Part shown: piece by piece, positions 21,660 to 34,022 of the stretch | Position numbering within the stretch: position 1 is the stretch's first letter | Layout: the number at the start of each line of letters is the position of its first letter | Assembly (NCBI GenBank): GCA_977020255.1 | Contig: CDROCS010000506.1 | Span: 3,348,001-3,412,000 of the forward strand | Length of the DNA stretch: 64,000 bases | Reading direction: 5' to 3' | From: Obrimoposthia wandeli | Lineage: Eukaryota | Position numbers and translations under genes: made by a program | The notes under the pieces: model-generated | What the model was told of the DNA's origin: nothing | The model's database searches: none | The model's input: only the letters and a program-made list of their open reading frames with translations

Positions 21660-21810
21660 TTCCGCTATCGCCCTCCGCAATACGGTAATATTTCAATAGG
21701 CCGGTATCGGGCTTTCAACATGTTGTTGATTACCGTTGCGGGGGCAGCGTTGGTTTCACACCAAACTTCCCGTTTAACTCAATCCTTAATTACTTGATAA
21801 CAAGCTATTT
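21660..21810 (-). ncRNA. Cobalamin riboswitch, short (class II-like) form
   Basis: Minus strand: TTAAACGGGAAGTTTGGTGTGAAACCAACGCTGCCCCCGCAACGGTAA-short hairpin-AAGCCCGATACCGGCC; P1 AATAG/CTATT; downstream hairpin with GGAGG loop complementary to the CCCCC loop. Confidence 0.92.
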
Positions 21811-21912
21811 AATAGTGAGCACCTACTGTAAGTTGCGGCACTCTAATGATTGTTGAGTGTAAAATCAACGACATTAACGAATATTGAAGGCTATTGGATA
21901 AGTATTGTACGT

Positions 21913-31830: not shown

Positions 31831-31863
31831 AAAGGGGAGAAACAGTTGCTGTTTCTCCCCTTT
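31831..31863. terminator. Bidirectional intrinsic terminator
   Basis: AAAGGGGAGAAACAG-TTG-CTGTTTCTCCCCTTT perfect 15-bp stem. Confidence 0.9.
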
Positions 31864-31895: not shown

Positions 31896-32459
31896 TTAAA
31901 AGTGAATGCCGTTCTCTAGTGAACTGATACGTGCTAATGACAGCGTATCAATGCCTTTATCTGCTAGCATTTTCGCGCCAGCTTGGAATGACTTCTCAAA
32001 CAAGATACCCACGCCAACTAATGTTGCGCTAGTCTGTGCCAGAATTTCTAACGTACCTTCAACTGCATTACCGTGTGCTAATACATCATCAATAAATAAT
32101 ACGCGGTCATTGTCATTAATGTGTTCAACGTTACAGTTCAATTCGTATGACGAGTTTTTAGTAAAGCTAAATACATTAGTTGTTAATACGTTTTCAGGAT
32201 CTAACATGCTACGTTTTTTCTTCATGACGACTAATGGTACATTCAGTTTTAACGCCACTAACGTCGAAATAGCAATGCCGCCACTTTCGATAGTAAGGAT
32301 ACGGTCAATTTTAGCGTCTTGAAAGTGGATCGCTAATTGCGATGCACACCAGTCTAAAATTTGAATATCAATTTGCTTAGTCAAAAAGCTACTTGCGTCT
32401 AGGGCTACGTTGTTAACTGATTTACCGTGCTCTAAAATCGCTTTTTCTAATAAGTTCAT
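31896..32459 (-). CDS. xpt: Xanthine phosphoribosyltransferase-like (Bacillus Xpt type)
   Basis: 'LTIESGGI', 'FSFTK', PRPP motif 'LFIDDVLAHG', 'EKSFQ.G', 'SLARI.SLE.G'. Confidence 0.88.
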   Translation of the reverse strand: MNLLEKAILEHGKSVNNVALDASSFLTKQIDIQILDWCASQLAIHFQDAKIDRILTIESGGIAISTLVALKLNVPLVVMKKKRSMLDPENVLTTNVFSFTKNSSYELNCNVEHINDNDRVLFIDDVLAHGNAVEGTLEILAQTSATLVGVGILFEKSFQAGAKMLADKGIDTLSLARISSLENGIHF

Positions 32460-32474: not shown

Positions 32475-33800
32475 TTATGAAAGTGCTAAATAAACAATAA
32501 ATAGTAGTGCTAGTGAGTAAATAATCGGATGTACTTTTTTGCCATCACCTTGCACTAACATTACGAAACAGTAGCTGATGAAACCCATTGCCATACCGTT
32601 GGCTGGCGAGAAGGTTAACAAGCTAAATACCATGATAAAGAATACTGGAATTGCAGATTCTTTTTTGTCCCAGTTAATCATCGCTAAGTTCTTAATCATG
32701 TAGATACCGATTACAACTAGTGCAGGTGCAACAATCGCCGTGGTAAAGATTGAGAACACAGGGAACAAGAACATAGAGATTAAGAACAGCGCCGCAACCG
32801 TGATTGCACTGATACCTGTTTTTGCACCCAATGATGAGGCAACCGCAGATTCAGAATAAGCTGTAATTGATGTAGTTCCTAATACCGTACCTATGATAGT
32901 ACCACCTGAATCGGCAATTAATGCAGATTTAGCGTTTGGCACTTTACCGTCTTTACCGATAATACCGGCATCACGTCCGACACCAACAATAGTACTTAGG
33001 CCATCGAAGAAATCGACAATAAAGAAGATAATAACCAAGAAGATTAAGTCACTCATTTTTGGCATTGTCAGTTGCGACAAGTCAAAGATAGCACCAAAGG
33101 TAGGCGCTAAGCTTGGCGGCATAGAGAATACTTCAGTTGGAATGGTTATCAAGTTACTACCAAGGAAGTGGTCGCTCAAAAGACTTAAAATAATAGATGA
33201 GATAAACGAAATAACAGTCGCTAGTTTCATATCGCGAACTAAACAACCAATAGCAATAAAGATACTGACCAGTGCAATGAACACTTTCGGGTCGTACACA
33301 TCGCCCATGCTCACCAGAATAAACGGGTTGCTAACGATGATACCGGCATTTTTAAGGCCTAAAAATGAAACGAACAAGCCCAGACCAACAGCAATACCGA
33401 GTTTTAAATCTTCAGGTATGGCTTCAATCATCACCTTACGAGCAGGTGTTAAGCTTAAAATTAAATACAGACAACCAGAAAGGAAAATAGCAAATAGTGC
33501 TTCATGCCAAAGTAACGAGATACCGCCGCCTAATAAGATAGCCTTAAAAAAGCCATTCATCGACATGCCGGGGGCTAACATAATAGGGTATTTAGAAAAC
33601 GCACCCATAATGAATGTAGCAATCGCTGCAGACAGTGCGGTAGCTGTAAATACTGAGCCTTTGTCTATCCCTTCGATGCTTCCTAAAATTGCCGGATTCA
33701 CTGCTAAGATATAACTCATCGCTAAAAAGGTAATTAAACCCGCGTAGATTTCATTTTTTAGAGTTGCGCCACGCGCAGACAGGAGGAAGTACTTGTCCAT
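32475..33800 (-). CDS. NCS2 purine permease (AzgA/PbuG type)
   Basis: 'EIYAGLITFLAMSYILAVNPAIL', 'LAPGMSMN.FF', 'GTTSITAYSES'; ATG 33800 with GGATG upstream. Confidence 0.92.
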   Translation of the reverse strand: MDKYFLLSARGATLKNEIYAGLITFLAMSYILAVNPAILGSIEGIDKGSVFTATALSAAIATFIMGAFSKYPIMLAPGMSMNGFFKAILLGGGISLLWHEALFAIFLSGCLYLILSLTPARKVMIEAIPEDLKLGIAVGLGLFVSFLGLKNAGIIVSNPFILVSMGDVYDPKVFIALVSIFIAIGCLVRDMKLATVISFISSIILSLLSDHFLGSNLITIPTEVFSMPPSLAPTFGAIFDLSQLTMPKMSDLIFLVIIFFIVDFFDGLSTIVGVGRDAGIIGKDGKVPNAKSALIADSGGTIIGTVLGTTSITAYSESAVASSLGAKTGISAITVAALFLISMFLFPVFSIFTTAIVAPALVVIGIYMIKNLAMINWDKKESAIPVFFIMVFSLLTFSPANGMAMGFISYCFVMLVQGDGKKVHPIIYSLALLFIVYLALS

Positions 33801-33907
33801 TAATAAACATCCATTACTATTAAGTTGGTTGATTTTAAATGACAATATTCCGAAGTATAACCTTGGGTAGGGGAACTATACCTAAAAAAGGTACAATTAT
33901 CCTGCTT

Positions 33908-33976
33908 CATTGTAGGTCTGAAATTTACGGTTTCAGAGTAGAGACTTAAGGCCCATATTGCCAAAATTATACAACG
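33908..33976 (-). ncRNA. Purine riboswitch, guanine type (C74) with atypical features
   Basis: CGUUGUA-UAA-UUUUGGC-AAUAUGG-GCCUUAA-GUCUCUAC-UCUGAAA-CCGUAAA-UUUCAGA-CC-UACAAUG; L2 GG and L3 CC kissing bases present; upstream of permease-xpt. Confidence 0.88.
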
Positions 33977-33994
33977 TCACATTGCTTGCGGGGC

Positions 33995-34022
33995 ATGTTA
34001 AAGATGTTGACGCGGTTGTCAA
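33995..34022 (-). promoter_or_regulatory. Sigma70 promoter for the riboswitch leader
   Basis: TTGACA-N16-TAACAT, predicted start about 12 nt before P1. Confidence 0.7.

What the first reader, a model, noticed from the sequence alone, without database searches (positions are those of the whole stretch)
33800..34022. Purine riboswitch with non-canonical core in a gammaproteobacterium
Seen: a complete purine aptamer 12 nt downstream of a TTGACA-N16-TAACAT promoter. U22, U47, U51 and C74 fit guanine recognition, but P3 has 7 bp instead of the usual 6, position 73 is C rather than A, and P2 has two U-U mismatches. Downstream AUUGUA can pair with the P1 3' strand (UACAAU), a candidate switching helix; I see no clear U-tailed terminator. 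Known: purine riboswitches are mostly Firmicute and sparse in gammaproteobacteria, and small core variants can change ligand (xanthine, 2'-dG, 8-oxoG classes). Inference: a possible specificity variant, or an acquired Firmicute-like riboswitch-permease-xpt module.
Basis: partly seen in the sequence, partly recalled or inferred. Interest (0 to 1): 0.72.

Follow-up and report, generated by a model that had tools for sequence, protein, structure and literature searches.

The report
Ordinary guanine riboswitch in Moritella
A standard guanine-sensing RNA switch sits in front of a purine-uptake and salvage operon in a cold-water marine bacterium (Moritella), and its one unusual core base is a natural variant that published mutagenesis found harmless, so the finding is real but ordinary.

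Summary
A complete purine aptamer (RF00167, 68.9 bits against a cut-off of 37) lies on the minus strand at 33994-33893. It sits behind a conserved TTGACA/TAACAT promoter and ahead of an NCS2 purine permease and xpt. The organism is Moritella.

The "non-canonical core" is overstated:
- The 7-bp P3 is the Rfam consensus length.
- U22, U47, U51 and C74 are all canonical, and J2/3 and J3/1 carry no insertions or deletions.
- The only core change is A73C. Position 73 is one of the least conserved core positions, and published A73C mutants of B. subtilis xpt bind ligand about as well as wild type.
- C73 also occurs in unrelated metagenomic aptamers, one of them upstream of purD-purK.

The aptamer is identical in all Moritella genomes examined, although 47% of third-codon sites in the permease gene vary. 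It is therefore under selection and is not a relic.

Relatives of the permease in Psychromonas, Shewanella, Vibrio, Ferrimonas and others carry aptamers too, so there is no sign of recent transfer from Firmicutes.

The likely mechanism is a translational OFF switch, which is inferred, not shown. A 21-bp long-range anti-aptamer helix competes with P1/P2, and forming the aptamer makes the start region harder to open.

The parts
33995..34022 (-). Sigma-70-type promoter, TTGACA-N16-TAACAT
   Evidence: scores it 10 of 12. The -35 hexamer is invariant, and a -10-like hexamer sits at the same spacing in Moritella, Psychromonas and Shewanella hanedai leaders. The other Moritella genomes read TAAGAT at the -10.
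33961..33985 (-). 5' arm of the long-range anti-aptamer helix: conserved 5' leader, P1 5' strand, J1/2 and P2 5' strand
   Evidence: It is paired in the MFE structure of the whole leader. Duplex energy is -25.3 kcal/mol against -13.0 +/- 2.8 for shuffles, and 0 of 1000 shuffles reach it. There are no variable sites in 9 Moritella leaders.
33907..33977 (-). Purine (guanine-type, C74) aptamer, P1 to P1. The Rfam hit spans 33893-33994.
   Evidence: RF00167, 68.9 bits, no indels. The isolated aptamer folds as the three-way junction. It has 0 variable columns of 71 across 9 Moritella leaders, while 47.5% of third-codon positions in the permease gene vary.
33874..33898 (-). P4 hairpin (10 bp, U5 loop) between the aptamer and the switch block.
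   Evidence: -9.4 kcal/mol, and present in both the free and the aptamer-forced folds. One pair runs U-A, U-G, C-G among Moritella genomes and is never C-A.
33842..33866 (-). Switch block: 3' arm of the anti-aptamer helix. In the aptamer-formed fold, part of it pairs with codons 2-6 instead.
   Evidence: The block is conserved across Moritella, Psychromonas and S. hanedai. Blocks with the equivalent complementarity but different sequences exist in the Vibrio, Shewanella and Ferrimonas leaders. Swap control p = 5e-4.
33785..33841 (-). Translation-initiation region: weak UGG-type Shine-Dalgarno, ATG at 33800-33798 and the first codons
   Evidence: ATG-GAC-AAG is conserved as the start in all relatives of this subgroup. 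The upstream in-frame TTG at 33845 is interrupted by stop codons in Psychromonas. The cost of opening this region rises from 10.2 to 13.7 kcal/mol when the aptamer is forced.
32475..33800 (-). NCS2-family purine permease, 441 aa
   Evidence: Pfam PF00860, 83.8 bits. The nearest Atlas clusters are named NCS2 or guanine permease. It is 99% identical to Moritella dasanensis.
31896..32459 (-). xpt, xanthine phosphoribosyltransferase, 187 aa
   Evidence: NCBIfam NF006671, 191 bits (cut-off 177), and TIGR01744, 170.9 bits. It matches B. subtilis Xpt structures 2fxv and 1y0b at 130 bits.
31831..31863 (-). Intrinsic terminator that ends the operon (15-bp stem, bidirectional)

Best explanation
This is a functional, conventional guanine-class (guanine-I) purine riboswitch of Moritella. 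It is transcribed from its own sigma-70 promoter and controls a two-gene salvage operon: an NCS2 purine permease and xanthine phosphoribosyltransferase.

The aptamer most likely binds guanine, hypoxanthine or xanthine through the canonical U22/U47/U51/C74 pocket. C73 is a genus-fixed, functionally mild substitution at one of the least constrained core positions.

Proposed mechanism (inferred, not shown): a translational OFF switch.
- Without ligand, the 5' leader, the P1 5' strand, J1/2 and the P2 5' strand (33985-33961) pair with a conserved block about 100 nt downstream (33866-33842). This breaks P1 and P2 and leaves the start region only weakly structured.
- With ligand, the aptamer holds its 5' half. 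The released block pairs with the first codons (UUGUC with GACAA, GGAA with UUCC) and extends the hairpin that holds the weak Shine-Dalgarno and the AUG. Initiation, and with it expression of the permease and xpt, falls.
For: Identity:
- RF00167 at 68.9 bits with no indels, and all ligand-contact bases canonical.
- The isolated aptamer folds as the three-way junction.
- Downstream lie an NCS2 permease and xpt, which is over its curated cut-off.

Selection:
- The aptamer and the 5' leader have 0 variable sites in 9 Moritella leaders, against 47.5% variable third-codon positions in the permease gene.

C73 is benign:
- Position 73 is only about 90% conserved among 89 guanine aptamers, and xpt A73C binds 2-aminopurine better than wild type (PMC2018637).
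- A73C costs only about 2-fold in affinity (PMC6847200).
- C73 recurs in unrelated metagenomic aptamers. One scores 90.8 bits, has a 7-bp P3 and lies upstream of purD-purK.

Family context:
- 71 of 81 permease leaders carry an aptamer motif: A73 in 62, C73 in 6 (all Moritella) and G73 in 3.
- The Rfam model confirms 17 of 20 sampled loci.

Mechanism:
- The whole-leader MFE (-49.3 kcal/mol, z -2.96) adopts the anti-aptamer helix.
- That duplex is -25.3 kcal/mol, and 0 of 1000 shuffles reach it.
- Equivalent complementarity with different sequences exists in other clades, with swap-control p = 5e-4.
- Forcing the aptamer raises the cost of opening the start region by 3.5 kcal/mol here. The mean over 70 leaders is +2.7, with 61 of 70 above +1 and none below -1.
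- With shuffled linkers the effect vanishes: 0.19 against 3.15 kcal/mol, Wilcoxon p = 2e-6.
Against: No binding or expression data exist for this RNA, and ligand identity is inferred from sequence alone.

- The effect of A73C was measured in the B. subtilis xpt context. PMC2018637 stresses that the effects of position 73 depend on context.
- Mean unpaired probability of the start region did not differ between the two states, and the AUG itself was predicted more open in the aptamer-forced state in the Moritella group.
- The duplex between the switch block and the start region is not better than shuffles.
- Only UUGUC/GACAA is conserved across genera, and GACAA is also constrained by coding.
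- Within the Moritella subgroup the anti-aptamer helix shows conservation rather than clear compensatory change. Its swap-control rank is mediocre when J1/2 and P2 are left out.
- The leaders compared are related to one another, so the p-values are optimistic.
Confidence: 0.85

Rival explanations
1. Specificity variant. C73, perhaps together with the tandem U.U pairs in P2, retunes the pocket so that the natural ligand is not guanine. It could be mainly xanthine or hypoxanthine, or another purine derivative. Alternatively the changes retune affinity for life at low temperature.
For: C73 is fixed in every Moritella genome examined and absent from the sister genera. Position 73 stacks directly beside the ligand plane as part of the U22-A52.A73 water-mediated triple (PMC2018637, PMC6847200). 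The effects of position 73 depend on context. The operon encodes a xanthine-specific PRT.
Against: All four ligand-contacting bases are canonical, and J2/3 and J3/1 carry no insertion or deletion. The defining marks of the xanthine-II, guanine-II, 2'-dG-II and 8-oxoG classes are absent. A73C changes xpt affinity 2-fold or less in either direction. The gene context is the classical guanine-riboswitch one. Ordinary guanine-I aptamers already bind hypoxanthine and xanthine within about 10-fold (PMC9295807).
Confidence: 0.07
2. The riboswitch-permease-xpt module was recently acquired from a Firmicute.
For: Purine riboswitches are ubiquitous in Firmicutes and occur in only one or two proteobacterial lineages, which has been read as horizontal transfer (PMC3766115). 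xpt passes its cut-off in only 11 of 151 sampled genomes of the order. This aptamer scores closer to the Firmicute-dominated Rfam consensus than the Vibrio-type aptamers do (68.9 against 42-58 bits).
Against: The permease with an upstream aptamer is present across seven gammaproteobacterial genera at 65-99% identity. The permease-xpt pair is also found in Psychromonas, S. hanedai, Ferrimonas and Aliagarivorans. GC content of 0.39-0.40 matches the flanks. Xpt matches B. subtilis Xpt only at 130 bits over 183 residues. The expression platform is of the translational, terminator-less kind shared with the other gammaproteobacterial leaders.
Confidence: 0.05
3. The aptamer is conventional but regulation is not translational. 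Candidates are the reader's P1-3'-strand/AUUGUA helix followed by CC-U6 acting as a weak terminator or switching helix, Rho-dependent termination, or control of mRNA decay.
For: UACAAU and AUUGUA are complementary and are followed by CC and a run of six U. The Shine-Dalgarno is weak, so coupling of transcription and translation could matter. The mean-accessibility measure did not show occlusion of the start region.
Against: The helix is absent in Psychromonas. The scan finds no terminator. The C/G ratio of the leader is about 1.0-1.3, which is not rut-like. The opening-energy coupling is specific to the natural linker.
Confidence: 0.2
4. Decayed relic: the mismatches in P2 and the C73 change mark a dying aptamer that no longer binds ligand.
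For: There are two adjacent U.U mismatches in P2 and an A.A at the outer end of P1. The score is lower than that of the two adenine-type aptamers of the same genus (about 78-79 bits).
Against: There are zero substitutions over 88 nt in 9 Moritella leaders, against 47.5% variable synonymous-type sites. L2 and L3 match the consensus exactly. The sister genera also have two non-Watson-Crick positions in P2. Genuinely degraded aptamers look different: some Vibrio copies are truncated at the 5' end.
Confidence: 0.02

Closest known systems
Bacillus subtilis xpt-pbuX guanine riboswitch (guanine-I; PDB 4FE5/1U8D)
   Same: The same three-way junction and the same U22/U47/U51/C74 pocket. L2 and L3 fit the family consensus. 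It also controls xpt plus a purine permease, with OFF logic.
   Different: - C73 in place of A73.
- P3 has 7 paired positions, as the Rfam consensus does. From my own recollection of the crystallised xpt and add constructs, those have 6.
- C48, which PMC2018637 also lists for B. subtilis pbuG.
- Tandem U.U in P2.
- Gene order is permease then xpt.
- There is no intrinsic terminator. The expression platform appears to be translational, with a long-range anti-aptamer helix.
Vibrio vulnificus add adenine riboswitch
   Same: It is a purine-family aptamer in a marine gammaproteobacterium that acts on translation, not through a terminator. An alternative apo fold involves the 5' part of the aptamer (PMC5605240 abstract). 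Moritella itself carries two such U74 aptamers upstream of adenosine-deaminase-family genes.
   Different: The add switch has U74 (adenine) and ON logic: ligand frees the Shine-Dalgarno. This element has C74 and predicted OFF logic, and its competing strand lies about 100 nt downstream.
Vibrio/Shewanella/Ferrimonas-type guanine aptamers upstream of the related permease genes
   Same: The same permease family (65-69% identity), C74, the same position in the leader, and a downstream block complementary to the 5' side of the aptamer.
   Different: Those have A73 (G73 in three), a 6-bp P3, J1/2 UAU, shorter and divergent L2/L3, lower Rfam scores (42-58 bits), GTG starts with a clear AAGG Shine-Dalgarno, and usually no xpt downstream.
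Guanine-riboswitch variant classes: xanthine-II, guanine-II, 2'-dG-I/II, the guanosine/2'-dG variant and 8-oxoG
   Same: The same three-stem scaffold. Like them, this RNA departs from the consensus in a junction strand.
   Different: Those classes are defined by changes at ligand-contacting positions or by junction indels. Xanthine-II has G51 with a 2-nt J2/3 insertion, guanine-II a 1-nt J2/3 insertion, 2'-dG-II a 2-nt J3/1 insertion, and 8-oxoG a deleted U47. They also have atypical gene associations and are confined to Firmicutes (PMC9295807, PMC6847200, PMC10556655). None of these marks is present here.

Membership tests
Purine riboswitch RF00167, guanine-I class | Covariance-model score at or above the Rfam gathering score | tested here: met
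   68.9 bits against 37, E 5e-10, full model 1-102 with no indels.
Purine riboswitch RF00167, guanine-I class | Three-way junction of P1, P2 and P3, with L2 and L3 able to form the loop-loop interaction | tested here: met
   P1 has 7 bp, P2 has 5 Watson-Crick pairs plus tandem U.U, and P3 has 7 bp. L2 (AAUAUGG) and L3 (CCGUAAA) are identical to the consensus. The junction is the MFE fold of the isolated aptamer. Formation of the tertiary contact itself was not testable.
Purine riboswitch RF00167, guanine-I class | Ligand-contact bases U22, U47, U51 and C74, with C74 specifying guanine-type ligands over adenine | tested here: met
   J1/2 is UAA, J2/3 is GUCUCUAC and J3/1 is CC.
Purine riboswitch RF00167, guanine-I class | A73 in the U22-A52.A73 triple (about 90% conserved) | tested here: not met
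   C73 here. This is not a strictly defining feature: natural G73 exists, and xpt A73C retains binding (PMC2018637; PMC6847200). C73 also occurs in other natural aptamers.
Purine riboswitch RF00167, guanine-I class | Location in the 5' leader of purine transport, salvage or biosynthesis genes | tested here: met
   An NCS2 permease followed by xpt, 107 nt downstream of P1.
Purine riboswitch RF00167, guanine-I class | Selective binding of guanine/hypoxanthine/xanthine and ligand-dependent control of expression | not testable with these tools
   This needs in-line probing or ITC, and reporter assays.
Adenine riboswitch | U74 | tested here: not met
   C74. The other two Moritella purine aptamers do have U74.
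Xanthine-II / guanine-II variants | G51 (xanthine-II) and a 1-2 nt insertion in J2/3, plus J3/1 changes; Firmicutes only | tested here: not met
   J2/3 has exactly 8 nt with U51. Class definitions are from PMC9295807.
2'-dG-II riboswitch | A two-nucleotide insertion in J3/1 | tested here: not met
   J3/1 has 2 nt, CC. The class definition is from PMC6847200.
8-oxoguanine riboswitch | Deletion of U47 and association with 8-oxoG deaminase genes | tested here: not met
   U47 is present and the downstream genes are a permease and xpt. The class definition is from PMC10556655.

The most novel reading that the evidence does not exclude
The genus-fixed C73, together with the tandem U.U pairs in P2, is an adaptive retuning of a guanine-I aptamer. 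It would either shift preference among guanine, hypoxanthine and xanthine to suit an xpt-centred salvage operon, or weaken the fold so that the switch stays reversible at the near-freezing temperatures where Moritella grows. It would work together with a long-range anti-aptamer helix that defines a so far uncharacterised translational OFF platform for guanine riboswitches in marine gammaproteobacteria.
Probability: 0.1. Interest if true: 0.45.

Novelty: new member of a known kind. Interest (0 to 1): 0.14.

Why it matters
It matters little for riboswitch classification. This is a textbook guanine-class aptamer in a classical gene context, and the supposed oddities are either the family consensus (7-bp P3) or a substitution already shown to be tolerated (A73C).

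Two things have modest value:
- It is a clean natural example of C73 held fixed by strong purifying selection across a genus.
- The comparison of about 70 leaders suggests a shared, terminator-less OFF platform for guanine riboswitches in marine gammaproteobacteria. It is built on a long-range anti-aptamer helix and could be tested at the bench. Studied guanine riboswitches are mostly transcriptional and from Firmicutes.

Tried and rejected
1. It is worth only -2.7 kcal/mol, a U-to-C change breaks it in 4 Moritella genomes, and it is absent in Psychromonas. The same bases form the better-supported P4 hairpin.

2. Intrinsic terminator in the leader. None was found.

3. Rho loading site. The C/G ratio of the leader is about 1.0-1.3, so there is no support for one.

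4. Mean unpaired probability of the start region as a read-out. It did not separate the two states, and for the Moritella group the AUG came out more open in the aptamer-forced state. I replaced it with opening energies and a shuffled-linker control.

5. Duplex between the switch block and the start region, tested against shuffles. It was not significant. In that run the start codons of the Vibrio group were also misplaced, because the tblastn match starts downstream of their true GTG starts.

6. Metagenome pattern scan for C73 aptamers. Most of the 80 listed matches were chance hits. Five were real aptamers: one was Moritella itself and four were unrelated.

7. The supplementary alignment of PMC2018637 is not held. 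The identity of position 73 in the natural variant CP-guaB could therefore not be read, and I make no claim about it.

8. No phylogeny against Firmicute permease or xpt sequences was built. The large protein searches were not used, because the proteins are not of unknown family. The genome-contig scan returned only close relatives.

9. The search of earlier findings by words returned nothing on purine riboswitches.
Full report
**What is there.**
- The Rfam scan of the whole window gives one Purine hit (RF00167) at 33994-33893: 68.9 bits against a gathering score of 37, E 5e-10. It covers model positions 1-102 with no insertion or deletion.
- Reading the alignment together with the sequence gives the following anatomy:
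  - P1 is 33976-33970 paired with 33914-33908 (7 bp, with an A.A at the outer model position).
  - J1/2 is UAA.
  - P2 is U-A, U-A, U.U, U.U, G-C, G-C, C-G.
  - L2 is AAUAUGG.
  - J2/3 is GUCUCUAC.
  - P3 is seven Watson-Crick pairs.
  - L3 is CCGUAAA.
  - J3/1 is CC.
- In xpt numbering, U22, U47, U51 and C74 are therefore present, position 48 is C and position 73 is C.
- The promoter scan finds TTGACA-N16-TAACAT at 34022-33995 and no terminator-like site between the aptamer and the start codon.
- Downstream on the same strand are three things:
  - a 441-aa NCS2 permease (33800-32475; Pfam PF00860; Atlas neighbours named NCS2 or guanine permease);
  - an 18-nt gap later, xpt (32459-31896; NF006671 at 191 bits, over its cut-off of 177);
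  - a strong 15-bp terminator at 31863-31831.
The only slips are that P1 starts 18 nt, not 12 nt, after the -10 hexamer, and that the strand was not stated.

**Whose genome.**
- The permease is 99% identical to that of Moritella dasanensis and 95-97% identical to other Moritella.
- The window sits on a contig of more than 3.4 Mb inside a 1.35-Gb, 6912-contig assembly.

**Are the "non-canonical" features unusual?**
- P3 length:
  - The Rfam consensus itself has seven paired columns in P3, and this sequence fits them without gaps.
  - Aptamers with a 6-bp P3 give hits of 100 nt in place of 102. These are the two adenine-type aptamers of Moritella and the Vibrio-type guanine aptamers.
  - A metagenomic aptamer with a 7-bp P3 scores 90.8 bits. 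Both lengths are normal.
- P2 mismatches:
  - The closest relatives (Psychromonas, Shewanella hanedai) also have two non-Watson-Crick positions in P2: C.A at 26.44 and U.U at 27.43.
  - Moritella has U.U at 27.43 and 28.42. Both groups keep five Watson-Crick pairs.
- C48: PMC2018637 finds every base but G at position 48 and names B. subtilis pbuG as a natural C48 aptamer.
- C73 is the one real departure from the core consensus:
  - Mulhbacher and Lafontaine aligned 89 guanine aptamers. They found positions 24, 48 and 73 to be the least conserved core positions, with position 73 at about 90%.
  - In B. subtilis xpt, A73G and A73U abolished 2-aminopurine binding, but A73C gave higher affinity than wild type.
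  - Matyjasik and Batey cite a 2-fold loss of ligand affinity for xpt A73C.
  - My metagenome pattern scan, once chance hits were filtered out, recovered four further natural aptamers with C73 and C74 from unrelated sequences.
  - The best of these (90.8 bits) lies upstream of purD and purK, a classical guanine-riboswitch target.

**Known variant classes.** None of their marks is present.

| Class | Defining mark | Source | Here |
|---|---|---|---|
| Xanthine-II | G51 and a 2-nt J2/3 insertion | PMC9295807, | J2/3 has 8 nt with U51 |
| Guanine-II | 1-nt J2/3 insertion | PMC9295807, | no insertion |
| 2'-dG-II | 2-nt J3/1 insertion | PMC6847200, | J3/1 has 2 nt |
| 8-oxoG | deleted U47, 8-oxoG deaminase genes | PMC10556655, | U47 present; permease and xpt downstream |

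**Is it functional?**
- Nine distinct Moritella leaders were compared: the window, five loci from species genomes and three more taken from complete genomes.
- They have no variable site in the 71-nt aptamer or in the 17 nt before it.
- The linker has 6 variable columns of 41.
- In the five Moritella copies whose permease gene is complete, 47.5% of third-codon positions vary.
- This is strong purifying selection. C73 and the tandem U.U pairs are part of a maintained RNA and are not signs of decay.
- Genuinely degraded copies look different. Three Vibrio loci have lost the 5' half of the aptamer, and six have a PurR-box-like palindrome and no aptamer.

**Distribution and the transfer idea.**
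- The genome scan with the permease returned 80 loci from Moritella, Psychromonas, Shewanella, Vibrio, Ferrimonas, Photobacterium and Aliagarivorans.
- 71 of the 81 leaders (window included) carry a recognisable aptamer: A73 in 62, C73 in 6 (all Moritella) and G73 in 3.
- The Rfam model confirmed 17 of 20 sampled loci.
- xpt follows the permease in 15 loci, from Moritella, Psychromonas, S. hanedai, Ferrimonas, Aliagarivorans and one record labelled Marinobacter nauticus.
- In a sample of 151 genomes of the order:
  - 21 have at least one purine riboswitch;
  - 11 have xpt over its cut-off;
  - each Moritella genome in the sample has three purine aptamers.
- In M. dasanensis the two aptamers other than this one are U74 types upstream of adenosine-deaminase-family genes.
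- GC content of the operon (0.39-0.40) matches its flanks.
- Xpt is only distantly similar to B. subtilis Xpt (130 bits).
- Sun et al. did read the patchy proteobacterial distribution of purine riboswitches as possible horizontal transfer.
  - That would be an old event.
  - Nothing here points to a recent Firmicute origin, and I built no inter-phylum tree.

**How it probably works (inferred).**
  - UACAAU (P1 3' strand) paired with AUUGUA is worth -2.7 kcal/mol.
  - A U-to-C change mismatches it in four Moritella genomes, and it is missing in Psychromonas.
  - The same AUUGUA is the 5' arm of a 10-bp hairpin, P4 (33898-33874, -9.4 kcal/mol).
- The anti-aptamer helix:
  - The minimum-energy fold of the whole leader (-49.3 kcal/mol, z -2.96) does not contain P1 or P2.
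  - Instead 33985-33961 (5' leader, P1 5' strand, J1/2, P2 5' strand) pairs with 33866-33842 over 7+2+12 bp.
  - That duplex is -25.3 kcal/mol against -13.0 +/- 2.8 for shuffles of either arm, and 0 of 1000 shuffles reach it.
  - Both arms are conserved across Moritella, Psychromonas and S. hanedai, including the leader bases upstream of P1 that the aptamer itself does not need.
  - The Vibrio, Shewanella, Ferrimonas and Aliagarivorans leaders have quite different sequences, yet each has a downstream block complementary to its own 5' flank and P1 5' strand.
  - Own-partner duplexes beat cross-clade ones (mean -14.1 against -11.7 kcal/mol, permutation p = 5e-4).
- The aptamer-formed state:
  - When the aptamer is forced, part of the released block pairs with codons 2-6 (UUGUC with GACAA, GGAA with UUCC).
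  - This extends the hairpin that already holds the weak UGG Shine-Dalgarno and the AUG.
- Opening energy of the start region (positions -18 to +15):

| Measure | Value |
|---|---|
| This window, free ensemble | 10.2 kcal/mol |
| This window, aptamer forced | 13.7 kcal/mol |
| Mean rise over 70 distinct leaders | +2.7 kcal/mol |
| Leaders with a rise above +1 | 61 of 70 |
| Leaders with a change below -1 | 0 of 70 |
| 22 representatives, natural linker | 3.15 kcal/mol |
| 22 representatives, shuffled linker | 0.19 kcal/mol (Wilcoxon p = 2e-6) |

- Together this points to a translational OFF switch, which fits the salvage function and the lack of a terminator.
- Caveats:
  - Mean unpaired probabilities did not separate the two states, and the AUG itself looked more open in the forced state in the Moritella group.
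  - The duplex between the block and the start region is not better than shuffles.
  - The leaders are phylogenetically related.
  - Everything rests on nearest-neighbour thermodynamics.
- I put about 0.55 on this mechanism and 0.85 on the identity claim.
- A Rho route has no particular support: the C/G ratio of the leader is about 1.0-1.3.

**Verdict.**
- This is a real, selected, conventional guanine-class purine riboswitch controlling a permease-xpt operon in Moritella.
- It is a new member of a known kind, of low interest.
- The only mildly new element is the inferred expression platform, shared by related leaders in marine gammaproteobacteria.

Noticed in passing
window 21685-21820 (-): Cobalamin riboswitch, RF00174, 52.8 bits.
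   Followed up: no
L024, L035, L069, L071, L077, L082 (Vibrio loci), about 150-250 nt upstream of the permease start: These related permease genes have no purine aptamer. In its place they carry a GCAAACGTTTGC palindrome that looks like a PurR operator, so an RNA sensor seems to have been swapped for a protein repressor site within one gene family. Many Vibrio leaders that do keep the aptamer also begin with a GCAAACG half-site just upstream of P1, which hints at dual control.
   Followed up: no
L026, L030, L034 (Vibrio atlanticus / splendidus group): The aptamer has lost its 5' half (P1 5' strand, J1/2, P2). J2/3, P3 and the P1 3' strand remain, and unrelated sequence is joined upstream. These look like true relics.
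   Followed up: no
L015 (Shewanella hanedai) compared with L079-L087 (other Shewanella): The S. hanedai permease is 89% identical to that of Moritella, with the Moritella-type aptamer and xpt. Other Shewanella are 66% identical, with the other aptamer type. This suggests exchange of the whole module among cold-water gammaproteobacteria.
   Followed up: partly
L089:1536-1600 (+) and L093 (-), Moritella dasanensis; similar copies in L001-L006 of the window's assembly: M. dasanensis has two further purine aptamers, both adenine-type (A73, U74, 6-bp P3, 77-79 bits). Each lies upstream of an adenosine-deaminase-family gene (HxHxDG or HxHxEG N-terminal motif).
   Followed up: partly
G000 as a whole; C2102:9667-9768 (L008): The assembly holding the window has 1.35 Gb in 6912 contigs, and the window lies on a Moritella-like contig of more than 3.4 Mb. 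A second contig carries an identical copy of this aptamer region. Six other contigs carry adenine-type aptamers, so several related bacteria or duplicate contigs seem to be present.
   Followed up: no
window 33995-34000 (-): The -10 hexamer reads TAACAT in this genome. It reads TAAGAT in all eight other Moritella leaders compared.
   Followed up: no
L184:8384-8480 (+) and L190:911-1008 (-), metagenome contigs: Two C73/C74 purine aptamers (about 56 bits each) lie in atypical contexts. One is upstream of a LytTR-domain protein and an MgtE-family transporter. The other is next to a weak HNH-like ORF.
   Followed up: no
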